The position numbers and the translations under genes were made by a program. Of a DNA stretch of 64,000 nt, positions 7,594-55,054 are shown piece by piece (position 1 is the first letter of the stretch; every line of letters starts with the position of its first letter). The DNA is from Podarcis bocagei (Eukaryota): assembly GCA_964188305.1 (NCBI GenBank), contig OZ076893.1, one strand, 5' to 3'. The notes beneath the pieces were generated by a model that had not been told where the DNA came from, searched no databases, and saw only the letters and a program-made list of their open reading frames with translations.

Positions 7594-7773
7594 NNNNNNN
7601 NNNNNNNNNNNNNNNNNNNNNNNNNNNNNNNNNNNNNNNNNNNNNNNNNNNNNNNNNNNNNNNNNNNNNNNNNNNNNNNNNNNNNNNNNNNNNNNNNNNN
7701 NNNNNNNNNNNNNNNNNNNNNNNNNNNNNNNNNNNNNNNNNNNNNNNNNNNNNNNNNNNNNNNNNNNNNNNNN
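7594..7773. other. N block, 180 bp
   Basis: Counted directly. Confidence 0.97.
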
Positions 7774-9374
7774 AAATTCATTGCTCACGGCAAGTGTATT
7801 TTTTTAAAATTCGAAAGACAAAGCAACTCACAAGGGTTATTTAGTAATCAGTGTGAATTACTTCAAGGTATAAACCCCACTGGAAAAAAAATTAAAAATA
7901 CATTTGCTGTATGGGAAGCATTATTGCTTTGGGTGTTACAATTTAATTGCATATTATCCTATAGCTTTTTAGACCACTTTTCTTTCAAAACCCCTTATTT
8001 TGAGAATAAAACTGCATAATCATGTGCAACAGGATTATTATATTGAAGAAATATCTCCTTGTCCTTCCAGCAGATATGTCTTCTGTGACTTGTATACCTT
8101 AGGCTGTGGAGGGTATTTTGTTTATTCAGAAGGACATGTAAAAGGAAGACGTGCAGTGTAAAGCCATCTCTTTTCCCATTTCAGATTTACAATAATAATG
8201 TTTCATTTATACTTATGTATTGATGTCCCAAGGCAATGTTCCAAATGAAAAGATAATAACATATGAAAAAGTGTCAAAAACTAATTACGTTTTGTAACTT
8301 GTTTTTCCTTCACATAAAGTATATTTTTCACAACACTGTCCAGTCACATGCTGGGATTCTTGCTAACATTATCACATGCCAGTCACACCAGGTCTCAGTG
8401 GTGCCTCTCCTTCTGTCATTATTTTCAGCATCAATTAATTTTCTCCTGACCTCAGCTTTAGAAAATGTTGCAGAGAATTATCAGTGCATGCTTTGCTGAG
8501 TCTATTTTGAAAGCATTAGGCCGCAATGTTTTTTTCTAAGATGGAGTAGGCCAAACATTATATTTTCTCACCTGCAGGGTTGCCTAGTAACCTGAATTAA
8601 GGATTTTTGCCAAGCCTTCAAGAGAAATAAAAGACTGTAATGCTGGTTGACCCAGGTTGGGGGTGGGGACTGGAGTCAGACCCATTGATATTGATCAGAA
8701 TTTTGAATAAGGAAATATGAAGCAAAAACCTCATTAACATTCACTGTGGAAGCAGTTCTATAGCTCATACAAGCTGATTTGATCATGCAAACTGAGGATA
8801 CTACATCTTTCACAAATGTTAAATTTCTATTATTCACTGTGCTTTTCTGTGACGTTTTGATGGTTTTTCTGTCTGTCAAAGAAAGAAATATTGACTACAG
8901 AAGAGATTTTAAAAGGCATCTTCTGAATAGGTAAATATACCTTGGAGAGAACGCTTTCCAGAAACATGTTTGCTGCATATGTTAGGTAGTGGTTCACATA
9001 GATTTGTTCAGCATTCATTTAATCACTTCAAGGGATGAAATTCCTTGTTTAATGTATTGCCATTGAAAAAGAAAGATCAGTGTACTTTAGAGGTGGGGGT
9101 CATTCTTTGTAACGCTATTACAGCTTTGTCCTTGACATTAGAGATTCCTGGAGGGGGGTGGAATTAGATAGGAGGAGGAGGAGGAGCATGGAGTAGAAAT
9201 TTCTGCTTCAAAATAGTAGCACAATTAGGAAATCAGCACCAACGACGGTCCTCGGCAAATGATGGTGTCAGGCCACTAAGGGCTGAGGGTGGCAGGGATG
9301 ACATTCACCCTTGCAAGATGGAAATAAATGCCCAGTTTGATAAAAGAAAACAGACAATTTATGTATACCCTGAA

Positions 9375-9786
9375 NNNNNNNNNNNNNNNNNNNNNNNNNN
9401 NNNNNNNNNNNNNNNNNNNNNNNNNNNNNNNNNNNNNNNNNNNNNNNNNNNNNNNNNNNNNNNNNNNNNNNNNNNNNNNNNNNNNNNNNNNNNNNNNNNN
9501 NNNNNNNNNNNNNNNNNNNNNNNNNNNNNNNNNNNNNNNNNNNNNNNNNNNNNNNNNNNNNNNNNNNNNNCTGCCTGTGGCANNNNNNNNNNNNNNNNNN
9601 NNNNNNNNNNNNNNNNNNNNNNNNNNNNNNNNNNNNNNNNNNNNNNNNNNNNNNNNNNNNNNNNNNNNNNNNNNNNNNNNNNNNNNNNNNNNNNNNNNNN
9701 NNNNNNNNNNNNNNNNNNNNNNNNNNNNNNNNNNNNNNNNNNNNNNNNNNNNNNNNNNNNNNNNNNNNNNNNNNNNNNNNNNNNNN
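9375..9786. other. Two N blocks (9375-9570, 196 bp; 9583-9786, 204 bp) separated by a 12-bp island
   Basis: Counted directly. Confidence 0.97.
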
Positions 9787-10637
9787 ATGTACTAGATTAT
9801 AAAACTTAAGAGTAGTGTTTATAGAAAGCATGCAAAACACTTTATTAGCAGCAAAGTAGGCAAAACATGCAGCGAGTTATTCCAGTGTTTGCAGTTTGTG
9901 AGCAACAGCTGTGTTTCTTAATGCTACAACACCCCACAGCCCCCCTCCATTTTTGTTGAAGGCCATAGTTCGGCCTTTCTATCCGTCTAAGCCTCAGTGA
10001 GACATAATGGGAAATTTGAGTAGGCTATGAGATTAAAGCTAGGAATCGATGGCTAGCCAGCAATTGTCATTTTCAAAAACATTCTTTTATCTTTTTAAAT
10101 ACAAAGCAGATCTTCTCCTCTTTAAAAAAAGAAAAGGGAAAAAAATTTAAATGGACAAAATTACCTTTGTGTGTGCAAGTATGTATGACAACCCATATAA
10201 ATTTTAATTTAATTGCTTAGAAAGGACATTGAGCTGTCAAATTTTTATCAGCCATAGGAATTTTAAAATGGTTTCCTCTTTGTTTAGTAACACAATTGGA
10301 ATGGATGATAGGCTGTATGTACATGGTTCTTATATGCAATATAATGTGTTTCAGTAAAATACTCTTTATTCTTAAAGGTAATATTGGAATGCATTAGAAC
10401 ATTAAAGTGAAATAGTCTCAGATCTCACTGACTCTGTTAGGTATTCAGCATTTAATAAAATATGGCTTGATTTGAAAGAACATTTAACCTTATTGTTTCA
10501 AAAGAACTCTTTGTCCTCTGTTTTACCTCAAAATTCATAGGTTGTAAGTGGCCCACAGAGTAATGCATCATTTAGTTTATGACATCTAATAAAGGTCTAC
10601 TGCATGCATTAAAACCAGGTGTTTCAGTATTTTCCTT

Positions 10638-10707
<70 letters not shown>
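10638..10707. repeat. (TTG)n microsatellite, about 23 units
   Basis: Read directly from the sequence. Confidence 0.98.
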
Positions 10708-11227
10708 ATCCTATTGTTCTTATACAGCCTAAAGAGAATGAATTCCTATTTGTGTAATTTTATATTTATACCTTTAATTAAGATATAACAAATTATGTGA
10801 GTGATCTGTCTTCACCCAAAGCTTATGTAAACATGAATTCATATATTTGAAAAAGTGTGCATGAATCTTTGTATGTCGTGTGTACGTCCATACATAAGAT
10901 TAAAAATTCTGCATTGTCAATCATTTCCTAATACATTAAAATGAGATTATTGTTAAACTACATTTATGAATCAGAAAGATGGCTACCAGTAAATGAAAAA
11001 CAACTTCAAACCTATTTCCAAACCTATAGCTGGACCATCATATTCCTTTGTTCTTGCGCAGGTTAATAGAGATTGAGGAGATGGGCAGAGGAAAAGCAGT
11101 GCAATTTTCTGCTATTTAAGCTTGGCGAAATGGCACTCTTCAGGAAGCAGCAAAAAGTATGAAAGCGTAATAGGCATTTTAAAAGTAGAAGTCCATATAG
11201 CTGCTTGAGGGATCCTCAGATTTAGGC

Positions 11228-11583
11228 NNNNNNNNNNNNNNNNNNNNNNNNNNNNNNNNNNNNNNNNNNNNNNNNNNNNNNNNNNNNNNNNNNNNNNNNN
11301 NNNNNNNNNNNNNNNNNNNNNNNNNNNNNNNNNNNNNNNNNNNNNNNNNNNNNNNNNNNNNNNNNNNNNNNNNNNNNNNNNNNNNNNNNNNNNNNNNNNN
11401 NNNNNNNNNNNNNNNNNNNNNNNNNNNNNNNNNNNNNNNNNNNNNNNNNNNNNNNNNNNNNNNNNNNNNNNNNNNNNNNNNNNNNNNNNNNNNNNNNNNN
11501 NNNNNNNNNNNNNNNNNNNNNNNNNNNNNNNNNNNNNNNNNNNNNNNNNNNNNNNNNNNNNNNNNNNNNNNNNNNNNNNNNNN
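11228..11583. other. N block, 356 bp
   Basis: Counted directly. Confidence 0.97.
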
Positions 11584-12132
11584 ACTTTCAGTAAGGAAAA
11601 GATACATAATGCTTACAAGCATCTGCAAGCAAGTGGTTTTTTAATTGCTATACAAACTATGCCTTAGTTAATTACTTCTAAAAGAATGAGAGTGTTGTAG
11701 AATACCATTTTTGGGGGGCTTCTGGCAGCAGAAGTAAATTTAAGTGGACAATTCTGTGTCTTCAGTGCATATAAAGTGCTGTGGATATATTCATTATAAA
11801 TTTTGAAATTCTTATGCTGCAGCTAATGTATTGCTTGTTGTGATAGTTATGCTGAACAAGCCGTATTGTTAGTTAACAGTGCAGCAGAGTCTTCAGATTT
11901 GGGCCTAGTTCTCACAGAAATGGATATTCTGAATTGAAATACATGTTGAAATACATAGCACAAATAACAAACCAAAACTGAAAGACCAATTTACCCAATT
12001 TTACGCAATCAAGCAGTTAAGCTGAAAAATCTGTGTCTGAACTGTGCGACTTCAGACTCCATGTGTAGGCTCACATAATAGAATATGGCTCCATATAGAA
12101 ATAAAATTAATCTCCCCACAAAGCAAACTAAA

Positions 12133-12516
12133 CAATAATGATGATGATGTATTTATACCCTGCCCTTCTGGCTGGGCTTCCCCATCCACTCTGGGCGGCT
12201 TCCAACAAAATATTAAAATACAATAGTCCTTCAGATCTTAAAAGCTTCCCTAAACAGGGCTGCCTTCAGATGTCTTCTAAAAGTCTGGTAGTTATTTTTC
12301 TCTTTGACATCTGGTGGGAGGGCATTCCACAGGGCAGGTGCCACTACTGAGAAGGCCCTCTGCCTGGTTCCCTGTAACTTCGCTTCTCGCAGTGAGGGAA
12401 CCACCAGAAGGCCCTCGGCGCTGGACCTTAGTGTCCGGGCAGAATGATGGGGGTGGAGATGCTCCTTCAGGTATACAGGGCCGAGGCTGTTTACGGCTTT
12501 AAAGGTCAGCACCAAT
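12133..12516 (-). mobile_element. L2-clade LINE 3' end
   Basis: ORF 12231-12515 (LTFKAVNSLGPVYL..RTLRSS..RAFSVVAPALWNALP..FRRHLK) is a typical L2 RT C-terminus, followed by the 3' UTR and a trinucleotide tail. Confidence 0.9.
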
Positions 12517-12582
12517 GTGTCAGAAAGAAGGATTTACCCAAAGTGGTACAATCCAAGTACAAATTTAACAACTCAGATCTAA

Positions 12583-12654
12583 ATTCCTGCATTGCAGGGG
12601 GTTGGACTAGATGAACTTTGGGATCCCTTCCAACTCTACGATTCTATGATTCTA
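12583..12654 (+). mobile_element. CR1-type 3' tail (truncated CR1 or CR1-tail SINE)
   Basis: Reads ttcctgcattgcagggggttggactagatga...cccttccaactctacgattctatgattcta. Confidence 0.8.
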
Positions 12655-12678
12655 GGTCATGGTTGGAGGCTAAAAATA

Positions 12679-13020
12679 CAGTGGTGCCCCGCAAGACGAA
12701 TGCCTTGCAAGACGGAAAACTCGCTAGACGAAAGAGTTTTCCATTTTGGAGGTGCTTCGCAAAACGAATCTCCTATGGGCTTGCTTCGCAAGACGACAAT
12801 GTCTTGCGAGTTCCTGCTGGTTTTTTTCCCTCCCCCCTTTTCTAAGCCGCTAAGCCGCTTATCAGCTGATCCGATCAGCAGATAAGCCGCTAAAAGCCGC
12901 TAAAAGCCGCTAATAGCGCTAATCCGCTAATCCGTCAATGGGCTTGCTTCGCAAGACGAAAAAAACGCTAGACGAAGAGAATCACAGAACGGATTCTTTT
13001 CGTCTTGTGAGGCACCACTG
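12679..13020. mobile_element. Tc1/mariner (Tigger/pogo-like) MITE
   Basis: TA|CAGTGGTGCCCCGCAAGACGAA ... TTCGTCTTGTGAGGCACCACTG|TA, with a 20/22 TIR match and internal TAAGCCGC repeats. Confidence 0.92.
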
Positions 13021-17467: not shown

Positions 17468-17583
17468 ATAACTCAGCTGATAGAACATGAGTCTCAGTTG
17501 GGCAAAAGATTCCTGCATTTGCAGGGGGGAGGACCAAATAGCCCTCGTGGTCCCTTCCAATTCTACGATTCTATGATTCTATC
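17468..17583 (+). mobile_element. Internally deleted tRNA-Lys/CR1-tail SINE
   Basis: actcag..tagaacatgag is joined directly to gttgggcaaaagattcctgcatt, followed by the tail ttctacgattctatgattcta. Confidence 0.7.
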
Positions 17584-18279: not shown

Positions 18280-19507
18280 TATAGGGAACAAAAATGAAAC
18301 AAAACATTTACAGTATAAAAAGTTTTGGGATTTCACCAGGCTGTTACAGGATGTGCACTGAATGGAACTGAAGTACTGTGTTCACTCCAAAACATTTGTA
18401 GGCACAAACCATGTCAAAAGTAGGATTGTGGATGACTGCCCCAATAATGTCATGAATGCAGGAGGGCCCTGGGAAAGAGAAACTGGGTTTTCTTCCAATT
18501 TTCTGCCTCTGACATTCAATGTGAATCCACATTCTCCTTCTCCAGACAATGAGATTTGTTATGGAAATGGTCCCATTTCACTTAGAAATTGATAAATATG
18601 TAATCTCCCAAGTTCATTATTAAAGGGAATGGTTTAGAAAAACTTTTTGTAAAGCACTAGGAAAATAATATCTACAATGCTGCCAGGTACTTGCATAGCT
18701 TTACATATAAGCTACTGGAATAGGCTTAATTGAACTTTGTTACTGGGGGTGGGGGTGGGAGAATCTAAACAATTACACTTCATAATTGCCGTGTATCTGT
18801 TTGTTTGTTTAAACAAATGGCTGCTGAATTAGGTGGTGCTAGAGTTTACTGAGAAATAGCAGATAGCACAGCTGTATTTGCACAGAGCGGTACCTGATTG
18901 CAACCTCCTGTAGTGTGAGCAGTGGTAAGTGAACTGTTTCTGTGTTGTTCACTCACTCTGTCAGATCGAAACTCAGCTCAATAGCATTAAACTAGCTCCC
19001 ATTTGAAAGATTTGTCTTACAAAACCCTGAAAACTGCTCTGAACATGCATACATTGATTTTGTTGCTGGAATCTCCTGAGCTTTGAGGAAAAAGCAAGCT
19101 ACATGTGCAGGTGGGAGAGGGCTTACTTCCTCAGTATTTTTAAAAAAGGAAGAGAAGATTAAGATTTTCTATTCAGCTAAGGCCCAATTAATCAGTGGCA
19201 TGTAAGAATATGACTGGTGTTAGTGTGGTTGTATTTTCTATAAAGAAACAATAAGTTAAGCTGTAGTCCTATGTGTACTTTCTAGGAAAAGTGAACAGTA
19301 ACCTAAAGTGAATTATATAGTGTGCCTTTATGTCAATTGGCAAGTGCACTAAACCTACCCATATGGATTTATATTACTTTCTCTATCAATGTACAGTAGT
19401 TAGAAATCTTCAAGATGATTTTATTTGTAGGCATTCATATATTATTTTCTGCAAAGGAAGCTAGCTACATAAACACATATTTTAAGGTACTGCTAATCAC
19501 TGTAGCA

Positions 19508-24408: not shown

Positions 24409-24596
24409 NNNNNNNNNNNNNNNNNNNNNNNNNNNNNNNNNNNNNNNNNNNNNNNNNNNNNNNNNNNNNNNNNNNNNNNNNNNNNNNNNNNNNNNNNNNN
24501 NNNNNNNNNNNNNNNNNNNNNNNNNNNNNNNNNNNNNNNNNNNNNNNNNNNNNNNNNNNNNNNNNNNNNNNNNNNNNNNNNNNNNNNNNNNNNNNN
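24409..24596. other. N block, 188 bp
   Basis: Counted directly. Confidence 0.97.
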
Positions 24597-25191
24597 ATAT
24601 TGATCAACTCTTTCTACACGAATTGTTAGCTGATTTTTTTTTTTGCAACAACTTTGTTTAAATGCAATCAATAGCCCACAATCAGTGCATTCCATAAAAA
24701 AATTGACAGATGTTCCCAAAATGCCTGCTAGGCATAAAGTTATCTGTTTACATATGCAACACAGGCATTTAAGGCCTCTTTCAGGAGTATACAGGTAGGC
24801 TTATCCTTAGAGAAAAATGTTCATAAATGTCAGATACTGGTATTCATAGGGACTTTTACTTCGATTTAAATAAAGTTGGGATTAAAAGGAAGTTGTTTCA
24901 TTGGCTAGGATCCAGTGAACTACACAAGTAGTTTCATGTGTCCAAGCATTGTTGAATGGCTGTTTCCTGAGCCCCAACTTTTGAAATTGCAAGGACTTTC
25001 AAAGGCAGTTTGTGGAATGGCATAGGAATCTGCAATATATAAGACACTAAACCCTCTGGCGTGTCTAAAGTAGCCCTTTGGATCCTAGCAAGTGCATAAA
25101 ACTATAATACCATACTATAATACAAATAATAACAGCAACAACAAGTACACATCGTTCATTTTAAATGTTCAAAGCTTTTAACATGCATTCC

Positions 25192-27270: not shown

Positions 27271-27814
27271 AGAATACCCAACCTTTATTAGGCTGTTGGC
27301 GGAGGTTCCAAAGATTTCTTCCAATGTTGGGGCTATCTCAAGCCTTTAGTTGTGGTGCTCCAGTCCAGCCTTGTAGTTTAAAACAAACACCTTGATGTAC
27401 ACATGGAGTTTCTGTGTGCAGCTTTTAATAATACTGAAGGGCTTAAGGAAGAATCCACAGTGCTTTATATTTGCAGAAAAACATTTTCCTTTATGAGAGA
27501 TTAAGGAAATGTACATAGTTTCTAGCACTGCATTCTAGACTCGAAGGCAGTAAAGTTTTTCTATTCATACAAAAACATTTCAGTATTCTGCGACTCTTGA
27601 TGTTGTTAATCCTGTTACTGTCCTCTTAATGCAACATTTCTCAGTCTTTTTTATTCCATTTTGTGCCTTTGAATAGCTGCGTTAAAAGCAAAGATTGAAA
27701 AGAAATGGTGAGATATCATTAGTTCATATGCATACAGGTTCAGCGTGTGGAAACGATGCTTCTAGGATTGGCTTCAAGTTGTGTGACTGATAGATCTTAT
27801 TTGTCTGATAGAGT

Positions 27815-28058
27815 NNNNNNNNNNNNNNNNNNNNNNNNNNNNNNNNNNNNNNNNNNNNNNNNNNNNNNNNNNNNNNNNNNNNNNNNNNNNNNNNNNNNNN
27901 NNNNNNNNNNNNNNNNNNNNNNNNNNNNNNNNNNNNNNNNNNNNNNNNNNNNNNNNNNNNNNNNNNNNNNNNNNNNNNNNNNNNNNNNNNNNNNNNNNNN
28001 NNNNNNNNNNNNNNNNNNNNNNNNNNNNNNNNNNNNNNNNNNNNNNNNNNNNNNNNNN
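27815..28058. other. N block, 244 bp
   Basis: Counted directly. Confidence 0.97.
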
Positions 28059-28629: not shown

Positions 28630-28630
<1 letters not shown>

Positions 28631-28705: not shown

Positions 28706-28709
<4 letters not shown>

Positions 28710-38314: not shown

Positions 38315-38382
38315 AGCGAGCCAGGAAGTCCCTGATTTGTATCTCACCTTGGCCATTCTCACTGTGGCCGTAGACATCCCAC

Positions 38383-38427
<45 letters not shown>

Positions 38428-40419: not shown

Positions 40420-40710
40420 ATTAATTTTTATGGTGTGTATAAGTTACATTTGATTAGTTTTTTGCATGATTAAAATTTGCAAAGCTTTTATGGCCCCCGG
40501 GAGCCTACCTGTAATAAACAGCTCTCACCTTCGAAACCATAAAACAGGCTTGCAGTACTTGAACATTAGATCTAATTGCCTTGCTACATCAAAGGAAGTA
40601 CCAGAGGACTGAGAAAAATCACAGAAGGGAGGAGGGGTAGAGGGCAGTTTCACCTCCAAAGGTTATGTGTTTGTGGCTTGGTGGAGCCCTGTAAAGTTAT
40701 GGCCTAAAAA
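40420..40710. promoter_or_regulatory. Candidate intronic enhancer with clustered posterior Hox/Cdx motifs
   Basis: TTTTATGG 40426, TTTTATGGCC 40486, GTAATAAA 40511, CCATAAAA 40537 and GTTATGGCC 40696, in sequence with no recognisable repeats. Confidence 0.35.
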
Positions 40711-42316
40711 CTGCTGTTTGCGATTAAGTTGATGGAGGAAAGTCTACCCCACAATCTCTCCCTGCTGCTGACACAGAGTCTTTGTTCACATTTAGATTTC
40801 TCAAACTGTTGCCAGGGTCAGGCAGAGGTCAGACACCATGATGATGTATAGGAGAACATGTCTGGGAATTTCTCTCATACTTAAAACACATACCAGAAAA
40901 AGAGCACCCTGCAAAAATTGTCTGATGAGACCCAGATGATGATACTTTGGCTATTCTTTTAGTACCTTCATGATTTTCTCTTTGCCCATCTCCCTCTCTC
41001 TCTCTCTCCCTCTCTCTCTCTGTTTTATTAATGATTACCATGACAGCCTTTACAATTTTATGCCCCCTCAAGATAAGGACACTCAGTATCACTCTGACAC
41101 TTCATTTTCCTGCCCAAAGGGAACGGACTGGTAAATCTAGGAGGAGGAGAAAATAACGTCCATTCCAGAGCTCGAGTCAAAATGAAAGTGCCAGAGGCTG
41201 TATTAGCCCATAGGTTCTGACTAGATGCATGGTGTGAGTGTGTGTGCCTGTGTACTTGGCATTAGTACAACCCAATCTAGTCACGATCACAGGCTTACAG
41301 CATCCCAAACTGTGCTCCCCCATCACCCTTAACAAACATAGTCTTGCTTCCTACTGTGACCAGGGAGCCTACAGTGTTTGATTAGTAATACCACTGAGAG
41401 AGGGAAAGAAGAAGAAGAAAGCATGCTAAGGCAGTGAGAATTGTTTATTCCATTTGTGCTGGCCATTCTGCATCAATATTTTTTTTAAAAAAAATGAGGA
41501 TTGCCTCCGCCCTTTCAAATACAGTTGAATGAAGTAGTCATTGATATCTAATTTGCTAGCATTTCTTTGTATACACAAACAGAATCAATGCAAAACATTC
41601 AGATCCTTTTAAAATTAAATGTTGTAGTAAACATATTTTTTTTAAAAAATGAAATGTGTTTTTTTAAGAGTTCGGCATTGCTGATTCCAATTGTTTACCC
41701 GTCCATGCAGCTCCACTGCAGAGTTGGCAAGTAAGGCACTAAGTAGCAATTTTTCTGTGCTCAGCTGCTCCATATGACAGAGGATATTTCATTCTGCTGT
41801 CAGAATGTTATTAATAAAACATGGGGTGCGGAAGGGGCCACAATTTCCCCTTTCAATCACTATAGCATTTACAATGAAAATTTTATGCAGTGTGTAATTT
41901 TCAGTTAATGCTTGACACTTAAAATGTCGGTAGCTGCATTTTGTACGGTTCCTGAAGGGTTAATTGTATCATGTTCCCTGCGTAAAAGCTCTGCTTATCA
42001 AAAGTGAATAGAGGAGTGTATGCAAATGTATGTCTGTGACCTTTTGCCTTTCCAGGGTTAATTTATATGGTCATTAAAGATTTTATGAAATTGAGCAGCC
42101 TGGTGTTTTGAATCCCATTTTACCTTCCCCTCCTAATTTGTATAATTCCTACCTGAACTGCGAAATATGACTTTCTTTCTTTTTTTGTTTGTATTGCAAT
42201 GAAAACAGCATGCTGTGCTGTAGGGAGTTGCAAGTCTGGTTATCTGGTATTACTCAGATTTCTAAAATTCATTAAAATGTGACATCAGCACAGTCAGAGA
42301 CAAATGATCACAAGAT

Positions 42317-42448
42317 NNNNNNNNNNNNNNNNNNNNNNNNNNNNNNNNNNNNNNNNNNNNNNNNNNNNNNNNNNNNNNNNNNNNNNNNNNNNNNNNNNNN
42401 NNNNNNNNNNNNNNNNNNNNNNNNNNNNNNNNNNNNNNNNNNNNNNNN
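42317..42448. other. N block, 132 bp
   Basis: Counted directly. Confidence 0.97.
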
Positions 42449-43156: not shown

Positions 43157-43242
43157 GTAAGATGCTAGAATTTTGTCACTCTTTAAAAAATCTTATTAAA
43201 TAGTCTTTCATTTAAAACCGTCTGGACATTCCTGTTATTATC

Positions 43243-43486
43243 NNNNNNNNNNNNNNNNNNNNNNNNNNNNNNNNNNNNNNNNNNNNNNNNNNNNNNNNNN
43301 NNNNNNNNNNNNNNNNNNNNNNNNNNNNNNNNNNNNNNNNNNNNNNNNNNNNNNNNNNNNNNNNNNNNNNNNNNNNNNNNNNNNNNNNNNNNNNNNNNNN
43401 NNNNNNNNNNNNNNNNNNNNNNNNNNNNNNNNNNNNNNNNNNNNNNNNNNNNNNNNNNNNNNNNNNNNNNNNNNNNNNNNNNNNNN
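43243..43486. other. N block, 244 bp
   Basis: Counted directly. Confidence 0.97.
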
Positions 43487-46400
43487 CACTTGAAAATTTC
43501 CCCTGCTTTCAAATTTTGTTTGCCTTGCAGCCCTAAGAATGTAGGAAAGCTTCTTCTCCCACCCCAGCTCCTGTTCTTGATATATGATCGCTTAGATTCA
43601 GGAATCTTCCTTCTTCCTGGGCATTTATCTAGTATTTAATTGGGGGGAGGGGGAATACAGAAAATCCAGTGAAAAAGTTTGCAGATGATTCAGCCTAAGA
43701 AAGAGGAAATATCATTGAAAACGGATTATGAGTTGGGTAATATTGATCTCTGGGAATATACAAAGCCCAGTAATGAAAGCTACTGTCTTTGAAAACAAAA
43801 CTCTTATGTCATGACATTTACTTGTGCACAAACAAACCCAAGGCCAGCCTCTGGCATGGATACACAAGGCTTTTTCTGTGTTTGATTTGGCAAATATGTG
43901 ACTTCATCCATGCTTTTTATGTATGAGATGGAAATCTATGGTCACAATGAATATTACATTGGCTACTTCTGCTGCACGCTATTCCTAGTTACATTATGCT
44001 GGATTCATTGAAGCAGAAGAAGTGCTGAAACAGGTTGAAGCCTATTAGTTTCAGGTAGTCATATATCTTTCCCTTGTATTCCAATGACAGCAGCATATAA
44101 AAGTGCTTGTATTCACTATAAAGATGTTTAGTTATACAGAAAATACCATTTTACATGCAAGTTTAGTAAAAACTGAATTGGCCGATATTTCTTAAGGTAC
44201 TCCTAAAATATTGTTTAAAACATAGTGAAGATACTGATGGGTCTTTATGCCATATTTGCTTAAGGAATAAATCTCATCTTGCATTTGGTTTTCAAAATGT
44301 TATGGCCAGTCTCTATTACCATTGAGAAACCTACACTGCACTGAGTTTATTTAGCTTTTGAAATCCAGGGAATGAAGAAGACCTGTCTATAGTGACTCCA
44401 TGTTTGTAGGCTTCTTTTTAAGTATTCTTATCCCTTTCTTGAAATACATTCTCTGAGAGAGGTAATGGACAGAAGAACTTTCTGCTCAGGCTCATTACTA
44501 AGTCCACACAGAAGAGTCATGGAAAAAAAATAGGCAAAACCACTTGTGAAACATTTTCCATGTGCTTCATCAAAAAAGCATTGTAATATCTTTCAGAGAT
44601 CTTATGCACCTAGTTTATCTACTGGAAAGACCTCAGAACTTAGAATAAGCCATGATGTTAATGGGCTAATAGGCAAAAATGGTGGTTGTCAGTAGAAAGA
44701 GTATGGGGAAATTTCTAAGATTCCATGAGAATTATACTTTTGGATGGACCAGGTTTAATTTGGACCAACCAATGCTGGAGTGTTTGCTGAAGAATGGCAA
44801 CCCAAAAACTGTGTAAGATAGTTTTAGCTTGAAAATCGTTTGTATTTCAAATTCTCAATCTCACCTTTTGAATTCTTTGATAGACCTCTCTAAACTAATT
44901 CTGCATTATCAGGCATTCATTCAAAAGGCTTAATTCTCAGCACAGCTAACTACTATGCATAATGACCACATAACTGCTTATGTATAATTGAATGTTAATT
45001 TAGGCTTTCTTCTCCTGAATTAAGTGTTGAAAATCTTGCCAAAGAAGTCCCAGGAAAACCAATATGTTAATCACAGCTTTAACAAGTTAGACAGAAAAAT
45101 ACTATCACCACTCTTTAGCATCAAATCTATTAGAAAAGGAAGGATTAACATGTTTAGTGCCCAAACAGTTCTGTAAACTGTTGTTCTGCCTTGCCTTCCT
45201 TATCTCAAACTGAGGCTTTCAAACAGAGACTTGGCAATAATCAAGCTATGTTTGCTGAATATTCATTCAGAAGGCAAGAGCCTCCTAATGCCTCATTTAT
45301 ATTGTCATTTAAATCTAGTGCCACTTTAGATTAATTATAATCCAAATTACATCTCAACGTAGTGTAAGAATTAATACGGAATTTACCCAGATTAATACAT
45401 TTGCATTGAAAATGTAATATGTTTCTGACATGGCTAAGGGGAACACTGTTTAACAAAGTAGTAAACACAAGAAGCAATGGAAATTCACCTTCATTATTGT
45501 AATAAAAGTTATCATTTAATTCTACTCTAATTAGAAATACTACTAGTGCTACAGGAAGGAATTTTTTTATTTAGAAATACTACTGTACTAGCTTTTATAA
45601 TTTTAGAATTATTTTGGATTTGACTAATATGTCAGAAGTTCTAAATTATACATTTTAAATCAAATTCAGTATAAATAATGAACCAGCATGCTTATAGGGT
45701 TTTTTAGTACTTTTTTATTTGTGCACACAATGTACTGAATTTCCACACTTATTAACATAACCTTTTTCATAGCTTTTTTTTTAAAAAAATGTTGTGAATC
45801 CCTACATCTGACTATTCTACTTTTACAGTGCTCCCTCATACACGTTTACTCATAAAACCCACTGTATTAAGTAGAACTTGCTGTTTGCTAGGCATGCATA
45901 AGACTGCAGCCTTAAATGCTTATTTTTAATTCAGTGCTGCTTTGGACTTAAATGGATCACTTTTCTGTTTCAGTACTTGTGCAAAAATGTAGAAAAGTTT
46001 GATAATTAGTCGTATTAGACATAGGATGAGAAATAATTTGTCACAGAAAAATAGGTAACAGGGATGATCTTACACAAGCATTGTGTTCCATATGAGGCCT
46101 ACTTCATATATTAAACCCTCATGTGAGCATCGACCAGGCAGTGCAGCATATTCTGGTCACCTCATGAATCAATCAATGACATGGAATTTGCTCATCCCAG
46201 TGCTGCACAGTTTTGGTAACAGCCGATGTTCATGTGACACATTCTTCACTACGGGACTAAACCAAAATGGCAGCATTCTCACATGAAACTAAACCAAATC
46301 TCTTGGCTCAGTGTCAAACAACTTGCACCTGTGGATAGCCCCTTTCCAGAGACTTTTCTTCACCTTTCACATGTGGCAAAATTAACCAGGATTCAGGAAT

Positions 46401-47903: not shown

Positions 47904-48920
47904 CAGTGGTACCTTGGTTTACAACCATAATCCATTCCGGAGGTCCATTTGTTAACCAAAACAGGTTGTAACCCAAGGCGCGCTTTCGCCAATGGGGCCT
48001 CCCAAAAAGAATTGTTCTTAATCCCAAAGAAATGGGTTGTAATCCAAAAAAAGGTTGCAAACTGGGGCACACACTTCTGGGTTGGACATGTTTAACTTTA
48101 ACAGGGAGAAATGTAAAGTATTGCACTTGGGCAAAAAAAATTAGAGGCACAAATACAAGATGGGTGACACCTGGCTTGAGAGCAGTACATGTGAAAAGGA
48201 TCTAGGAGTCTTGGTTGACCATAAACTTGACATGAGCCAACAGTGTGACGCGGCAGCTAAAAAAGCCAATGCAATTCTGGGCTGCATCAATAGGAGTATA
48301 GCATCTAGATCAAGGGAAGTAATAGTGCCACTGTATTATGTTCTGGTCAGACCTCACCTGGAGTACTGTGTCCAGTTCTGGGCACCACAATTCAAGAAGG
48401 ACACTGACAAACTGGAACGTGTCCAGAGGAGGGCAACCAAAATGGTCAAAGGCCTGGAAACGATGCCTTATGAGGAACGGCTAAGGGAGCTGGGCATGTT
48501 TAGCCTGGAGAAGAGGAGGTTAAGGGGTGATATGATAGCCATGTTCAAATATATAAAAGGATGTCATATAGAGGAGAGGGAAAGGTTGTTTTCTGCTGCT
48601 CCAGAGAAGTGGACACGGAGCAATGGATCCAAACTACAAGAAAGAAGATTCCACCTAAACATTAGGAAGAACTTCCTGACAGTAAGAGCTGTTCGACAGT
48701 GGAATTTGCTGCCAAGGAGTGTGGTGGAGTCTCCTACTTTGGAGGTCTTTAAGCGGAGGCTTGACAACCATATGTCAGGAGTGCTCTGATGGTGTTTCCT
48801 GCTTGGCAGGGGATTGGACTCGATGGCCTTTGTGGTCTATTCCAACTCTGATTCTATGATTCTATGTTTGTAATCCAAAACGTATGCAAACCAAGACATA
48901 TGCAAACCAAGGTACTACTG
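47904..48920. mobile_element. Tigger/pogo-like MITE (~240 bp) split by a CR1 insertion
   Basis: TA|CAGTGGTACCTTGGTTTACA ... TGCAAACCAAGGTACTACTG|TA, with an 18/20 TIR match. The halves are 47904-48093 and 48870-48920. Confidence 0.9.
48094..48863 (+). mobile_element. Young 5'-truncated CR1 LINE (RT C-terminus, 3' UTR and (ATTCTATG)n tail)
   Basis: ORF 48160-48789 (EKDLGVLVD...[13 protein letters not shown]...RRLRGDMI) has only one upstream in-frame TAG, at 48142. ATGTTT is duplicated at 48088-48093 and 48864-48869. Confidence 0.95.
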
Positions 48921-48984
48921 TACTGTATTGGATATCCCAATGTGGTAGAGGTAGCGGGTCTATGCTTTGGTATACTGTATTTGT

Positions 48985-50110
48985 GATCCCAGAAAAACAG
49001 GTGAAAAGTATTGTGAAGGATAAGATAACAAACAGAATAACAAGTCTTGCTGAAGCAGAAACAGCCTGGCTTCTGCAAGGGCAAGTCATGTCTCACAAAC
49101 CTATTAGCTTTTTAATAATGTCAACAAGCATATAGATAGAAGTGATCCAGTTAACATAGTATACTTGGACTTTCAAAAAGCTTTTCACAAGGTAGAAAGT
49201 AGAGTCCCCCCAAGGATTGATAGTGGGACCTGTGCTTTTTAATGTGTTCACAAACAATTTAGAGTTAGCAGTGAGCAGTGAGGTGACCAGGTTTTCTGAT
49301 GATACCATTGTTCTGGGTCATTAAAACAATAAGTGATTTTGAAGAGTTCTAAAAGGATCTCTCCAAACTTCTTGAATGGGCAATAGAATGGCAGGTGCAA
49401 TTCAATGTAACAAGTATAAAGTGATGTATGTTGGGGCAAAATGCACTAATTTCACTTGTATGCTTCTGGAAGCTGAACTGGAGGTGACTGGCCTAGAATG
49501 AAATATTGGAGCCATAACAGAAGGCTCAATGAAGATGTCAACTCAGTGTGTGGCAGTTGTGAAAAAGGCAAATTCCATGCTAGGAATCATTGAGAAATAA
49601 ATTGAAAATAAAACTGTCAATATAGTGCCATTATACTGTGTACAGTTCTGGTTGTCTCACTTTAAAAAGAATATTGTAGAGTTGTTAAAGTTTGTGAAAT
49701 TATGCATTGAGAAAGTGGATAGAGGAATTATCTTCTTTCTCTCTCGTAACAATAGAACTTGTAGACATCCAATGAAGCTGAATATTGGAAGATTCATAAC
49801 ATAAAAGGTAGTACTACTTCATGCAGCACATAGCTAAACTATGGATCTTGCTCCCACAGGAGGCCGTGATGGCCACCAACTTGGATGGCTTTAAAAGAGG
49901 ATTGGATAATTTCATGAGCTACAAGGCTATTAATTGCTATTAACCATGATGTTTATGCTGTGTCTCCACAGTTGGAGGCGGTAATGTTGCTGAATACAAG
50001 TTGCCGTAAACCACAGGTTTCATAAAAGCATTTGGTTGGCCACTGTGATAACAGGACAGTGCACTAGATGAGCCATTGGTCTGATTCAGCAGGCCCTTCT
50101 TATGTCCTTA
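48985..50110 (+). mobile_element. Old degenerate CR1 LINE (RT core to 3' UTR)
   Basis: Broken motifs GFCKGKSCLTNLL, IVYLDFQKAF, PQG..GPVLFNVF, F(S)DDT and KKANSMLGII; the tail reads ...gcccttcttatgtcctta. Confidence 0.85.
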
Positions 50111-51316
50111 GCAATACTGATGTAGATGTGGTGGTCATGGTGTTTCTGTTGGGGTATATGTACTGTATAGGTTTTCAGAATTTACAGGACAATGGGAAGT
50201 TAGAACACAGTATTCACATGATAACTAAGCATTTCATTTCCAAAAATATCTGCATTTTAATGCCTTATCAAATCGAGATTCAAAAATTCAAAAACATTTA
50301 AACACGACGTCAAATCAAAGCAGCAACATCAATCAAGCTTCCTACAAATATGAACACCTAAGGTATAGGAATTGTTCATAGTACTGATAATCTTGTGTCA
50401 TGTGGTGGTTCAAGGGCATTGACACATTGAGTTTGCCAAATGTGTCTGTTTTGCAAATACAAATGATTTTGAGAATCCAGCAGGAAGTTTTTTTGTTCAG
50501 ATTGGCATGAAAGGAGAGTCTAGTAGTGAAAAATTTCCAAAAGTACTTATCTTTCAATATTATATCAATTATCAGAACTGACTCTCAGTTGGTATAAATC
50601 ATAGATTTGATTAACACTATAGCTCTTGTTTTAGGGGGTACATTGACATTGACATGTCAACTCTGAGACATTTCTGAAAGAGTTTTTTGTGCATATTTTT
50701 CCTGCTTCCTCAAAGGCATTTTGACATCAAACCAGATTTTCAGGCAAAATTCTCTGGAAAAAAAATGTATAATGTGATATGCAGAAATTCAATGATGGCA
50801 CTCTCTGACCCATATAGATCGCAACAATACATTTTATAATGTATTTTGTGTGTTTTTATCTTGTAAGTTTGTATTGTGAGCCGCCCTGAGATCTACAAAT
50901 GGCGGGCAGTATACTAATTTAATAATAAACACCACAATATCAACAACATGGCTGCTGTCACAGTCCTGGAATGCATCTCTTCAGTGTTGTGCAGCAGACC
51001 TATTTCATGTGGTTAGAAGTCTTTCTTATCATGGCCAGCAAGAATAGCTCTTGGGAGCTATTTGCCAACTATTGCACAAATAAAATCACTTTCATGGTTT
51101 CTGACTTAGACACCACTTAGAATCAGAGATGGTTTTAACTTGAGGTCCATCTGGTAATTAAAACTTGTTCATCCAGAGGTTGTGGACTAGGTTATTTGCA
51201 GAACTAAGGCCAACCACTAAATATGTTAATGGCTCTCTGATTGAGGCTGCTTGCAGCCTTAAAAGATGCAGTGTTTCAGATCATTTGGGGGTGAGTTGTG
51301 GGGGTTTAGGGAAATA

Positions 51317-51800
51317 CCGTATTTTTCGCCCCATAGGGCGCACCGCCCCATAGGACACACCTAGTTTTTTGTGGGGGAAAATAAAGGAAAAAAATCCCCC
51401 AATCCCAGCCCCGAGAACAGCCTGCTATCTGCAAGCCTAGGGAGGCCAGCGGCAAGTCGCGCCGGTCTCCCCAGGCTTCGGAATGCAGGCAGCTCTGCGC
51501 AGCCATCGGGAGGCGGGTGCGACTTCGCGCCCGGCTCTGGATGGCTGCGCAGAGCTGCGCTCACCCCGGGACTGCAGGCAGCTCTGCGCAGCCATCGGGA
51601 GGTGGGCGCGAAGTGGCGCCGGTCTCCCAAGGGCTGCACAGAGCTTCCTGAAGCCTGGAGAGCGAGAGGGGTTGGTGCGCACCGACCCCTGTCGCTCACC
51701 AGGCTTCAGCGAAAGCCTGCATTCGCCCCACAGGACGCACACACATTTCCCCTTCATTTTTGGAGGGGGGAAAGTGCGTCCTATAGGGCGAAAAATACGG
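51317..51800. mobile_element. CpG-rich Tc1/mariner MITE with CCGTATTT TIRs (Tc2-like)
   Basis: TA|CCGTATTTTTCGCCCCATAGGGCGCAC ... GTGCGTCCTATAGGGCGAAAAATACGG|TA, with a 25/27 TIR match. Confidence 0.92.
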
Positions 51801-52520
51801 TAAATTTATATCTGAACAATCCTAACATCTCACATCCAGTATCAAACCTACCATTTTGGGTAAAAGTTTGAAGTATGTGGTGACATCTCTGGTCCAGGCT
51901 GATAGTAAGATCCTTTCCAATCAGGCTTTGGAACAGAAACTGCCTTGATTGCTCTTGGTGTTTGTCCTTGGCTGGAGTTTGTACTTGGATGGAGGACTGG
52001 TTTATGTGGGGTGTGATGGTTGAATTTTCTGGAAGTGGTTCTGCTTATTCCCAAGAGGGACTCAATGTGGTGCTGGAAGACTGCTATTTTACCCCATGGA
52101 ACAGCGTTCCAGCTTCTTTCCCATGCTTTTTAACATCTGCACAAAACCCCTGAGATAGGTCAACTGGAGGTATAGGTTGAAGTGTCATCACTAGTCTGCT
52201 TGTTTTCATTTTCTAATCCCAGGGAGGAAGTGTTGCTAACAAACCAGTGTGTGAAGTTGGTTCAGGAGATACTAGGTAGACAAACAGAAACATATTCAGA
52301 ATAATACAGAATTAAGTGGGCTAAATTCCTGGTATAAGTGCTCCCTTGAAGTAATGGTTGTGCAACCTGGGGTACTTTTTAGTCGGGCACTATGAGTGTA
52401 TTTTACTAACTTCAGCTAATTCATCACCAGCCTTTCCTGGAGAAGGTAGATCTGGCTTGTTGCTTCCATACAGAGTTAATATGCTCTCTATGGGCTGCCT
52501 TCAAACACAGTCTGGAAAAT

Positions 52521-52668
52521 AAAAAAATTCCTTCCTGTAGCACTTTAAAGACCAACTAAGTTAGTTCTTGGTATAAGCTTTCGTGTGCATGCACACTTCT
52601 TCAGATACCTGAAGAATACCCGAAGATACTTATTTTGACTATGGCAGACCAACACGGCTACCTATCTG
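52521..52668. mobile_element. Penelope-like (PLE) terminal-repeat remnant with an inverted segment, inserted in an L2
   Basis: Contains gtagcactttaaagaccaactaag...agctttcgtg...cttcttcagatac plus the inverted ...cagaccaacacggctacc. It is flanked by AGTCTGGAAAAT (52509-52520) and AGTCTTGAAAAT (52669-52680). Confidence 0.75.
52571..52608 (-). ncRNA. Minimal (Penelope-type) hammerhead ribozyme motif
   Basis: The minus strand reads GUAU-CUGAAGA-A-GUGUG(CAUG)CACAC-GAAA-GC-UU-AUAC. This gives stem I GUAU/AUAC, the CUGANGA and GAAA core, stem II, and a palindromic AGCU in place of stem III. Confidence 0.7.
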
Positions 52669-52859
52669 AGTCTTGAAAATTCAGTTGATGTTGCCAGGCT
52701 GTTGTATGGCACTAAAAGATCAGAGTGTATAGATCGATCTTCATCTGTATTGGATGCCCATTTGTTTCTGAGATTGATGTTTAAGTGCTTGTATTGACTA
52801 GTATCGAATTAAATGGCTTATAACCGCATTGCCACAGAAAGTGTCTGCTATCATACAAA

Positions 52860-52961
52860 GGGTTGTAGCTCTGTAGTAGTAGAGCACATGGTTGGAATGC
52901 AAAAGGTCCCAGATTCAATCCTTGGCATCTGCAACAGAAGAAAACTCCTGTCTGAAACCCT
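52860..52961 (+). mobile_element. 5' fragment of a tRNA-derived SINE (Squam3-like)
   Basis: Reads gtagctc..gtagagca....atgcaaaaggtcccagattcaatccttggcatct...tctgaaaccct. Confidence 0.6.
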
Positions 52962-54770
52962 AGTGGTCAGGGTGCACTAGGGATGGTTGCAGGCCTAATG
53001 ACGCCAGCCAGGCCATTTTGTCCAAGCCACATTCCACCTGCCCATCAGTGATGTCATATATGATGTCCAATGCGAGCAGCTAAAACATGGCTAGGCTGGG
53101 CCAAAATGGGCTTCTGAAGCCCTGCCAATCAGGTGATAGGCAGGGCTTCTAAAGTGCTGCACATCTGCCTTCTGAAGTGTGGTGGGACTCCAAAATGCGT
53201 TCCAGGAATCTCTGCATGAGGTTTCTAAAGAGCCCTGCATGGTGCTTTGATTGTTTGAGGCTTCAAAATGTGATGGGCATACCAGTTTTCCTATTGCTAC
53301 GTTCTTAATTTGCCCAGACTATGAGATCAGATAAGGTGATGTCAGGTAGGCAGAAAAAGAGAATCTAACTACCTTCCCAGAGCTAAGCTCTGCCTTTATC
53401 CGTCTTTAGCCGACTTTTATTTCAGTCAGCTTTTAAGGTATGATCTCCTATCTGCTTGAATTTTTAGTTTGCTACTGATGTCTTTTAAATCCTTTAATTG
53501 TTTTTATTTACAGTTAAAGATTCTGAAATTGCAAAGGAGATAAATTTGGAATGCACATTTGACGCAGCAAAGTGAATCCCCCCCCCTCAAATCATCTTAA
53601 CATTAAAAGGGGAAGTCAGATATAAAGTGCACCTTTAAAACAGCACAATTAGGAAGAGACTAAAAATATTATCTTAAGTCTCCCAATCTTGCCTATGGTG
53701 GTTCATGGTGGGTGATGGCTGGGGGAGCTCAGGCTCGATGACCTGGGTTTGCACTAAGAGGCAGACAAGAAGCAGTCCTCTGGCCTCTTCACCAGCCTCA
53801 GCTTCTGTAGCTGGAGTCAGCTAGGGCCCCACCCTCCCAGGCTAGGTGGGAAAAGGGCTGCAAGGCAGGGAGCAGGACTTCCAGAATTCACAGCCAAGGT
53901 AGACACCAACTGGTGTAGCTTTCCAATGCATGGAGTATATTTTCACCGCCTTTTACAAAACCTTTTGGCTCCTTGTTTCTCATAAGTCTTTCCTTTTTTA
54001 AAAAAAAAAGTCACTTAAAATGCCATCCTGTTGATTTATAGGAAGTGCAGGGGTGTGTTGCCACAAGTGAATCAGAAGTAAGTTATCATGCTTCTGTGTT
54101 TAATACAGTATTCCAATAATGCAAATATTTAGTATTTTGTTAATATGGCTTAAAGTTGGAATGACTGGGAAATCATATATTTTTGGTCTTAAAATAATGT
54201 TGTTCCTTAACATCATAGGCAACTTGCAAAATTAATTTTAAAAAAAACCCAAAGGCACGGCCCTGGCTGTTACTATGCAATCCATTGTGTTCATGTTGAT
54301 CAATCAGTCATTCTGTTAAAAATGTCAGAGAAGATACTTTTACCACCAATACTAGCGTGTTCCTAATTAAATTTAACAATTGGGATGAAATACAGGAATC
54401 AGTTCAATGCATTTATCATAAACTGCATTCATATATTTAAAAAGTACCTACACAAAAAAATATATTTGACCCTTTCATAATATGTCTTCTTAATTAGTAC
54501 AGTGTTTTATATTTTTTTTTCAAATGATGCCCCCATTTTTCAAAGGTATATCCATTTTTGTCATCCTCTCAAGGTCCTGCTTTCCTGATACTTTCTACAA
54601 GTATTTTTTAAAGCTTTTGTTTCAGTAATTGCCATAACCTTATTTTAAAATTAAAGCTAGGTTATTAGACAACAAGGTTCAATTTGTTCATTTATATGAA
54701 CTCCATGTGGATTTTGAAAATCAAGATAAATCTTCATGCACAACATACAGTCAGATTACCCCTGGACAAT

Positions 54771-55054
54771 NNNNNNNNNNNNNNNNNNNNNNNNNNNNNN
54801 NNNNNNNNNNNNNNNNNNNNNNNNNNNNNNNNNNNNNNNNNNNNNNNNNNNNNNNNNNNNNNNNNNNNNNNNNNNNNNNNNNNNNNNNNNNNNNNNNNNN
54901 NNNNNNNNNNNNNNNNNNNNNNNNNNNNNNNNNNNNNNNNNNNNNNNNNNNNNNNNNNNNNNNNNNNNNNNNNNNNNNNNNNNNNNNNNNNNNNNNNNNN
55001 NNNNNNNNNNNNNNNNNNNNNNNNNNNNNNNNNNNNNNNNNNNNNNNNNNNNNN
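54771..55054. other. N block, 284 bp
   Basis: Counted directly. Confidence 0.97.

What the first reader, a model, noticed from the sequence alone, without database searches (positions are those of the whole stretch)
7594..55054. All nine N blocks have length 4 mod 8: computational masking, plausibly hiding ultraconserved elements
The lengths are 180, 196, 204, 356, 188, 244, 132, 244 and 284, all equal to 4 mod 8 (for example 100+8k). Nine independent lengths would share one residue with probability (1/8)^8. Two blocks are separated by only 12 real bases (9571-9582), which cannot be a contig, and their starts differ by 208, a multiple of 8. The blocks lie in unique sequence with no recognisable repeats, never inside TEs or coding exons, which is the opposite of typical assembly gaps. 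ZFHX4 is a developmental regulator known for dense conserved noncoding elements. I infer that a windowed filter, such as a human-similarity or contamination screen, erased the most conserved enhancers, so the Ns mark their positions.
Basis: partly seen in the sequence, partly recalled or inferred. Interest (0 to 1): 0.7.

Follow-up and report, generated by a model that had tools for sequence, protein, structure and literature searches.

The report
Masked conserved elements in ZFHX4 intron
The nine runs of N are not sequencing gaps but letters blanked one for one by a software screen, and they sit on the most conserved cores of known-type regulatory elements in a lizard's ZFHX4 gene, so this is a data-preparation artefact, not new biology.

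Summary
The window has nine N runs of 180, 196, 204, 356, 188, 244, 132, 244 and 284 letters, all 4 mod 8 (chance 6e-8). Two are split by a 12-base island, and their starts differ by 208.

- The big open frame at 59197-63999 is ZFHX4, so the blocks lie in its intron.
- I fetched ZFHX4 loci of a frog, a sturgeon, a catfish, a tarpon and a conger eel. Every block has a significant conserved anchor 0-4 bases from an edge.
- The spacing of the flanks in those species equals the N-implied spacing: 417 vs 417 for blocks 2+3, and within 1-3 bases in at least one species for blocks 1, 6, 7 and 9.
- The 12-base island matches 12/12 at exactly the predicted offset.

So the Ns replace real letters one for one, on peaks of roughly 430-million-year conservation.

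The block starts share no common grid. That fits a word screen stepping 8 bases from a locally set phase, most simply reference words sampled every 8th base, plus padding. It was not tested, and no masked letters were looked up.

Several first readers noted similar N runs elsewhere in this genome. This is an artefact of low interest.

The parts
7594..7773 (.). N block 1, 180 letters (4 mod 8, phase 1)
   Evidence: The left flank is conserved to tarpon and conger up to 2 nt from the edge (z 19-27). Spacing is 198 in the window against 199 in both fish, but the right anchor is marginal.
9375..9570 (.). N block 2, 196 letters (phase 6)
   Evidence: The left flank is conserved to tarpon and conger up to 4 nt from the edge. 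The length is confirmed by the register of the island.
9571..9582 (.). 12-base unmasked island between blocks 2 and 3
   Evidence: It matches tarpon 12/12 at exactly the offset fixed by both flank anchors, and this is the only 12/12 match among 404 positions. The same holds in conger at the right-anchor offset.
9583..9786 (.). N block 3, 204 letters (phase 6, same as block 2)
   Evidence: The tarpon and conger alignments start at 9787, the first base after the block. Blocks 2+3 span 417 in the window against 417 in tarpon and 418 in conger.
11228..11583 (.). N block 4, 356 letters (phase 3)
   Evidence: The left flank 11046-11227 is 94% identical to tarpon and 92% to conger, and ends at the last base before the block. 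Spacing is 378 against 410 and 409, so the flanks are collinear but the two fish are about 31 nt longer.
24409..24596 (.). N block 5, 188 letters (phase 0)
   Evidence: The sturgeon alignment (88%) starts at 24597, the first base after the block, and so does the tarpon anchor. The left flank has no significant anchor, so the spacing could not be tested.
27815..28058 (.). N block 6, 244 letters (phase 6)
   Evidence: The sturgeon, tarpon and conger alignments end at 27814, and the catfish one at 27813. Spacing is 246-247 in the window against 240 (sturgeon), 243 (conger) and 244 (tarpon).
42317..42448 (.). N block 7, 132 letters, the shortest (phase 4)
   Evidence: The sturgeon, tarpon and conger alignments end at 42316. 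Identity is 92% in the last 80 nt. Spacing is 137 against 135 in all three species.
43243..43486 (.). N block 8, 244 letters (phase 2)
   Evidence: The left flank is conserved to sturgeon, tarpon and conger up to 1-2 nt from the edge. The right flank has no anchor, and in sturgeon the place falls in that assembly's own 1146-N gap.
54771..55054 (.). N block 9, 284 letters (phase 2)
   Evidence: The frog alignment starts at 55055, with 98% identity in the first 40 nt. Spacing is 295 against 296 in frog, 306 against 303 in sturgeon and 308 against 330 in tarpon.
56733..56940 (+). Small ZFHX4 coding exon (two C2H2 fingers), unmasked
   Evidence: It has an open frame with C-x2-C...H-x4-H motifs and GTAAGT directly after it. 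It is about 80% identical in frog, sturgeon, tarpon and conger.
59197..63999 (+). Giant ZFHX4 coding exon (open frame runs off the window), unmasked
   Evidence: It is an open frame of 1601 codons with three homeodomains and C2H2 fingers. It is 82% identical over 100% of its length to a ZFHX4 protein.

Best explanation
The nine N runs are deliberate in-place masks. A similarity screen, applied when the sequence was prepared for this scan, overwrote real letters with N one for one. Each mask has length L0 + 8n, with L0 equal to 4 mod 8, and its phase is set locally rather than by the genome coordinate. The simplest design that gives this is an index of reference words taken every 8th base. Every position of the lizard sequence is looked up against it, and hits (probably padded) are merged and blanked. 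The reference is most likely the human genome. In this window the screen hit only the cores of deeply conserved noncoding elements in the large ZFHX4 intron upstream of the giant exon. These elements belong to the known ZFHX4 cluster of ultraconserved noncoding elements. Shown here: the quantised lengths, the non-common phases, one-for-one replacement, the position on conservation peaks, and the gene's identity. Inferred: who applied the screen, that its reference is human, the word length and the padding.
For: - Lengths are all 4 mod 8 (6e-8 by chance). Phases are 1,6,6,3,0,6,4,2,2, so there is no single query-side grid. The two blocks in one indel-free element share a phase, and the island between them is 12, also 4 mod 8.
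- Replacement is one for one. The island matches tarpon 12/12 at the offset set by both flank anchors, unique among 404 positions.
- Flank spacing matches the N count: 417 vs 417 for blocks 2+3; 137 vs 135 for block 7 in three species; 246-247 vs 240-244 for block 6; 295 vs 296 (frog) and 306 vs 303 (sturgeon) for block 9; 198 vs 199 for block 1.
- Conserved alignments to frog, sturgeon, catfish, tarpon and conger end or begin exactly at block edges. Eight of nine blocks lie within 4 nt of an alignment that covers 7.8% of the DNA, and 0 of 50000 random placements reach that.
- In four flanks identity peaks next to the edge.
- The fetched loci's own gaps are 50, 50, 33, 1146, 500 and 100 N, which are ordinary sizes.
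- A mole-rat ZFHX4 locus was withheld.
- ZFHX4 holds 42 UCEs (PMC11276968). The HNF4G/PEX2/ZFHX4 cluster holds 79 UCNEs (PMC3436827).
- Other first readers reported, elsewhere in this genome, a lone 212-letter gap and a 36-base island. Both are 4 mod 8 (unverified notes).
Against: - The criterion 'similar to human' was not tested, because looking up the letters or the human sequence is barred.
- The frog and fish loci served by the look-up of encoding contigs are not masked at the orthologous places, so the screen is either applied only to the scanned genome or their versions fall below its threshold.
- Blocks 5 and 8 have only one conserved flank, so their true lengths are unverified.
- Block 4 differs by about 31 nt from the two fish, and block 9 by 22 nt from tarpon. 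These could be real indels in those lineages, but they are also compatible with a small miscount.
- Reptile UCEs average 89-95% identity to human, so blocks of 132-356 cannot be runs of exact matches alone. The model needs padding or mismatch tolerance, which I cannot see directly.
- With nine blocks, the word length and padding cannot be determined.
Confidence: 0.85

Rival explanations
1. The masks were already in the public assembly, put there by the submitter or by a contamination screen such as NCBI FCS-GX that took human-like conserved elements for human contamination and hard-masked them.
For: FCS-GX has a FIX action for internal contamination, and its authors mention hard-masking. That would fit a mask belonging to one assembly rather than to the platform.
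Against: FCS-GX samples eukaryote words every 20 bp, not 8. It extends hits to gapped alignments. It applies FIX only to inter-kingdom chimeras, and it explicitly spares 'highly conserved intervals' in eukaryotes. Lizard and human are in the same kingdom. The operators themselves say N stretches may be masked on purpose, and the platform withheld a mammalian locus.
Confidence: 0.08
2. The Ns are true assembly gaps whose lengths were estimated by a scaffolder.
For: The scan's program labels six of them as assembly gaps by default. Variable-length gaps do exist in scaffolded assemblies.
Against: Nine variable lengths share one residue mod 8 (6e-8). A 12-base 'contig' lies between two gaps, and it sits in perfect register with both flanks in tarpon. 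Flank spacing equals the N count to within 0-3 nt for six blocks. The flanks are unique and repeat-free, and they lie on conservation peaks. Real gaps in the fetched loci have fixed sizes of 50, 100 or 500 N.
Confidence: 0.01
3. The masks come from a screen with another criterion, such as a repeat or low-complexity filter, a filter on generic vertebrate conservation, or a screen against some non-human reference.
For: The arithmetic says nothing about the reference. Some elements conserved in fish are masked.
Against: The flanks are neither repetitive nor of low complexity. Several elements conserved in four fish species are not masked: 40512-41370, 43830-44096 (87% to tarpon) and 18905-19132. 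Conservation with fish is therefore not the criterion.
Confidence: 0.05

Closest known systems
Hard-masking of a genome by a k-mer or similarity screen (in-place replacement by N)
   Same: The N count equals the true length, the flanks are continuous, the lengths are quantised by the screen's step, and a tiny unmasked island lies between two masks.
   Different: Usual hard masks target repeats or contaminants. This one hits unique, deeply conserved noncoding DNA. Its step of 8 and base length of 4 mod 8 match no public tool I could check (FCS-GX uses a 20-bp stride).
ZFHX4 cluster of ultraconserved noncoding elements (UCNEbase cluster HNF4G/PEX2/ZFHX4, 79 UCNEs; 42 dedUCE UCEs in ZFHX4)
   Same: The location is inside ZFHX4. 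The elements are dense (nine masked cores plus about ten unmasked conserved elements in 59 kb), noncoding and unique, and their flanks are conserved from lizard to frog, sturgeon and teleosts at up to 94%.
   Different: Formal membership could not be checked because the cores are masked and must not be looked up. The definitions are at least 200 bp at 95% or more between human and chicken, or 100% among human, mouse and rat.
Scaffold gaps of an assembly
   Same: They are written as runs of N.
   Different: Real gaps in the fetched loci are 50, 100, 500 or odd sizes. They do not preserve spacing or register, and they do not coincide with conservation peaks.

Membership tests
In-place (letter-for-letter) computational mask | The N count equals the number of real letters replaced, and the flanks are continuous | tested here: met
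   Blocks 2 and 3 are exact: 417 vs 417 in tarpon, with the island 12/12 in register. Blocks 1, 6, 7 and 9 agree within 1-3 nt in at least one species. Block 4 is collinear but about 31 nt shorter than in the two fish. Blocks 5 and 8 have only one flank anchored.
In-place (letter-for-letter) computational mask | Lengths carry the signature of an algorithm (quantised) rather than of biology or a scaffolder | tested here: met
   All nine lengths are 4 mod 8 (6e-8). The island of 12 and the total span of 412 are also 4 mod 8, and the phases are not common to all blocks.
In-place (letter-for-letter) computational mask | The screen's reference is the human genome | not testable with these tools
Assembly gap | The sequence on the two sides is not known to be continuous, and the length is arbitrary or roughly estimated | tested here: not met
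   The flanks are collinear at the N-implied spacing in up to three outgroup species per block, and the 12-nt island is in register.
Assembly gap | It lies in repeats or hard-to-assemble sequence | tested here: not met
   The flanks have no second copy in the window, no tandem repeat lies within 500 nt, and the flanks are conserved single-copy elements.
Ultraconserved noncoding elements of the ZFHX4 regulatory block | Located within the ZFHX4 locus, and noncoding | tested here: met
   The exon is identified as ZFHX4. The blocks lie 4-52 kb upstream of it in intron sequence. Stop-to-stop open frames of 100 or more codons that are free of N do not touch the blocks.
Ultraconserved noncoding elements of the ZFHX4 regulatory block | Deep conservation across vertebrates | tested here: met
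   All nine blocks have a significant flank anchor 0-4 nt from an edge in frog, sturgeon, catfish, tarpon or conger. The permutation test gives P < 2e-5.
Ultraconserved noncoding elements of the ZFHX4 regulatory block | At least 200 bp at 95% or more between human and chicken (UCNE), or at least 200 bp identical in human, mouse and rat (UCE) | not testable with these tools
   The cores are masked, and comparison with human sequence is barred.
NCBI FCS-GX 'FIX' hard mask | 20-bp word stride for eukaryotes, inter-kingdom contamination only, and conserved intervals exempt | tested here: not met
   The method text of PMC10898089 does not fit the observed step of 8, the same-kingdom pairing (lizard and human) or the conserved targets.

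The most novel reading that the evidence does not exclude
The masks could serve as a free, letter-blind map of the lizard elements that still share long words with the reference genome. If so, this intron holds nine such cores. At least seven of them have both flanks conserved back to ray-finned fish, and some may not be in current UCE or UCNE catalogues. The unmasked neighbours (for example 40512-41370) would then be elements kept in fish and lizard but diverged in the reference lineage.
Probability: 0.1. Interest if true: 0.2.

Novelty: not a real feature. Interest (0 to 1): 0.08.

Why it matters
The value is for housekeeping, not biology. In this genome an N run of variable size that is 4 mod 8 should be read as a deliberate mask. 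Its length is true and its flanks are continuous, so frames and distances can be counted across it. It also marks a very conserved element. N runs of 50, 100 or 500, or of other sizes, are ordinary gaps. This saves later readers from treating the masks as assembly defects or as hidden genes. The elements underneath belong to the already described ZFHX4 cluster of ultraconserved noncoding elements.

Tried and rejected
- A single fixed grid in genome coordinates is rejected: the nine starts fall on six different phases.
- Pure exact-match runs without padding are judged unlikely. Reptile UCEs average 89-95% identity to human, so exact runs of 132-356 in nine places within 47 kb are implausible.
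- FCS-GX as the source is rejected on stride, scope and its exemption of conserved intervals.
- Rfam finds no RNA family in the window.
- The gecko locus L003 turned out to be ZFHX3, with only coding similarity, and was not used. The brook trout locus L005 aligned almost only in the exon and added nothing.
- The mole-rat ZFHX4 locus was withheld by the tool, and I did not pursue it.
In the fish and frog loci I computed only coordinates and flank identities. I compared the 12 letters opposite the unmasked island, and neither printed nor aligned the letters lying opposite the masks.
- Word length and padding could not be fixed. For example, 32 + 2x50 = 132 would fit the shortest block, but so would many other pairs.
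Full report
**Observation.** A direct count finds nine N runs at 7594-7773, 9375-9570, 9583-9786, 11228-11583, 24409-24596, 27815-28058, 42317-42448, 43243-43486 and 54771-55054. Their lengths are 180, 196, 204, 356, 188, 244, 132, 244 and 284.
- All nine lengths are 4 mod 8. Nine independent lengths would share one residue with probability (1/8)^8 = 6e-8.
- Blocks 2 and 3 are separated by 12 real bases, and their starts differ by 208 = 26 x 8. The island (12) and the total span (412) are also 4 mod 8.
- New here: the starts fall on phases 1,6,6,3,0,6,4,2,2 mod 8. No single grid in genome coordinates produced them.

**Setting.** The window has one very long open frame, 59197-63999 on the + strand, running off the end.
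- It has three homeodomains and several C2H2 fingers. Its homeodomains are closest to the solved ATBF1/ZFHX3 domains.
- It is 82% identical over its full 1601 residues to a ZFHX4 protein, against about 50% for ZFHX3 proteins.
- An earlier, unchecked note places KCNB2 1.5 Mb before the window. From my own knowledge, that agrees with human 8q21 synteny.
- A small exon with two C2H2 fingers and a GTAAGT donor lies at about 56733-56940.
- All nine blocks therefore lie in ZFHX4 intron sequence, 4 to 52 kb upstream of the giant exon. Neither exon is masked.

**Continuity, the test asked for first.** I did not touch the masked letters. I fetched ZFHX4 loci of other vertebrates through their annotated proteins:
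- bullfrog, L001;
- Chinese sturgeon, L002;
- a catfish, L004;
- tarpon, L006, and conger eel, L007.

The last two span the whole orthologous intron. Only coordinates and flank identities were computed. For each block I anchored the 100 nt on each side by local alignment with shuffled controls. Where both anchors are significant, the spacing compares as follows.

| Block(s) | Spacing in window | Spacing in other species |
|---|---|---|
| 2+3 | 417 | 417 tarpon, 418 conger |
| 7 | 137 | 135 in sturgeon, tarpon and conger |
| 6 | 246-247 | 240 sturgeon, 243 conger, 244 tarpon (tarpon's right anchor marginal) |
| 9 | 295 / 306 / 308 | 296 frog / 303 sturgeon / 330 tarpon |
| 1 | 198 | 199 tarpon and conger (right anchor marginal) |
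| 4 | 378 | 410 tarpon, 409 conger |

Blocks 5 and 8 have one conserved flank only.

The sharpest test uses the 12-base island. In tarpon it matches 12/12 at exactly the offset fixed independently by both flank anchors, and that is the only 12/12 match among 404 positions between the anchors. The same holds in conger at the right-anchor offset. So 196 and 204 N stand for exactly 196 and 204 letters. The Ns are an in-place mask, and the flanks are continuous.

**What is hidden.** Conserved alignments between the window and the other species stop exactly at block edges.
- Sturgeon: 24597-24735 starts at the first base after block 5, and 27722-27814 and 41746-42316 end at the last base before blocks 6 and 7.
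- Frog: 55055-55157 starts at the first base after block 9.
- Tarpon and conger: 9787 onward starts right after block 3. 11046-11227 ends right before block 4, at 94% and 92% identity over 182 nt.
- Catfish: alignments end 1 and 7 nt before blocks 6 and 7.
- With the sensitive anchors, all nine blocks have a significant conserved anchor 0-4 nt from an edge.
- The union of blastn alignments covers 7.8% of the 59 kb of noncoding DNA. Eight of nine blocks lie within 4 nt of one, and none of 50000 random placements reached eight.
- In four flanks, identity is highest next to the edge and falls with distance: 92% beside block 7, 88% beside block 6 and 98% beside block 9 against frog, each in the first 40 nt, plus the 94% over 182 nt left of block 4. 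Three other flank comparisons show no such peak.
- The flanks are single-copy in the window and free of tandem repeats.

The masks therefore sit on peaks of noncoding conservation that go back to the common ancestor with ray-finned fish.

**Literature.**
- ZFHX4 is among the genes richest in such elements, with 42 UCEs in the dedUCE set (PMC11276968).
- Three dense UCE clusters along the gene are listed in PMC13513235.
- The UCNE cluster HNF4G/PEX2/ZFHX4 holds 79 elements (PMC3436827).

**How the mask was probably made.** What is shown is L = L0 + 8n, with L0 equal to 4 mod 8, and a phase set locally. Blocks in one indel-free element share a phase.
- The simplest design is an index of reference words taken every 8th base and looked up at every query position. 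Hits on one ungapped diagonal then fall 8 apart, merged hits have length k + 8(n-1) plus padding, and the phase follows the reference coordinate.
- An extension in 8-base units from a seed of length 4 mod 8 would give the same numbers.
- Reptile UCEs are on average 89-95% identical to human. Blocks of 132-356 are therefore unlikely to be exact matches throughout, so padding or mismatch tolerance is needed. A 32-letter word with 50 letters of padding on each side gives 132, the shortest block. That is only one of many solutions.
- Coding exons are unmasked even in the homeobox. This fits a word screen, because synonymous changes break long exact words.
- Not every fish-conserved element is masked: 40512-41370, 43830-44096, 45124-45515 and 18905-19132 are not. 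Conservation with fish is therefore not the criterion.

**Whose mask it is.** I infer a human-likeness screen in the scan's data preparation. This was not tested.
- The main rival is a mask already in the public record from a contamination screen. FCS-GX fits poorly: it uses a 20-bp stride, applies FIX only between kingdoms and exempts conserved intervals.
- True gaps are excluded by the register and spacing tests. Real gaps in the fetched loci are 50, 50, 33, 1146, 500 and 100 N.
- Because 100 and 500 are themselves 4 mod 8, the residue alone is not a signature.

**Earlier notes of this scan.** Several first readers saw N runs in conserved noncoding DNA of this same genome and guessed masking. 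Two of their figures, a lone 212-letter gap and a 36-base island, are also 4 mod 8. None of these notes carried a follow-up, and I did not check them.

**Limits.**
'Squamate' rests on the earlier notes and on the look of two repeat-derived open frames (my own knowledge).
- Identity to human, formal UCE or UCNE status and enhancer activity were not tested.
- The lengths of blocks 5 and 8 are unverified, and block 4 differs by about 31 nt from the two fish.

**Verdict.** The thing itself is a data-preparation artefact lying over known-type conserved elements, so its biological novelty is nil and its interest low.

Noticed in passing
window 40512-41370, 43830-44096, 45124-45515, 18905-19132, 8336-8457, 6882-7032: These are unmasked noncoding elements conserved between the lizard and two to four of the fish or frog loci, at up to 87% identity to tarpon. 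They are deep ZFHX4 intronic conserved elements that escaped the mask.
   Followed up: partly
L002 6334-9405 (sturgeon): The window's elements 40512-41370 and 41737-42316 each match two places in the sturgeon locus, in the order A, B, A', B'. This is either a tandem duplication of about 1.6 kb of the conserved pair in the sturgeon or an assembly artefact there.
   Followed up: no
window 56733-56940 (+): A small ZFHX4 exon encodes two C2H2 fingers and is followed by GTAAGT. It is about 80% identical in frog, sturgeon, tarpon and conger.
   Followed up: partly
window 48145-48786 (+): An open frame of 214 codons looks, from my own knowledge, like the C-terminal part of a CR1/L2-type LINE reverse transcriptase. 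It has no Pfam hit at E <= 0.01.
   Followed up: partly
window 12234-12533 (-): An open frame of 100 codons carries an 'ALWNALP'-type motif that I recall from squamate repeat-derived ORFs. It has no Pfam hit.
   Followed up: no
window 51480-51645: A GC-rich tandem duplication with an 89-nt unit in 1.9 copies at 83% identity. It is overlapped by open frames of 106-168 codons on both strands.
   Followed up: no
window 61204-61389 (+): An imperfect CCA/CCACCT repeat lies inside the giant exon and encodes a proline-rich, low-complexity stretch of ZFHX4.
   Followed up: no
window 52509-52680: Another first-reader note (s1-340360) reports a minimal hammerhead ribozyme in a Penelope remnant here. The Rfam gathering-threshold scan of the window found no family.
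   Followed up: no
The look-up of encoding contigs, protein P0001: The naked mole-rat ZFHX4 locus was returned as 'withheld', with no DNA, while the frog and fish loci were served unmasked.
   Followed up: no
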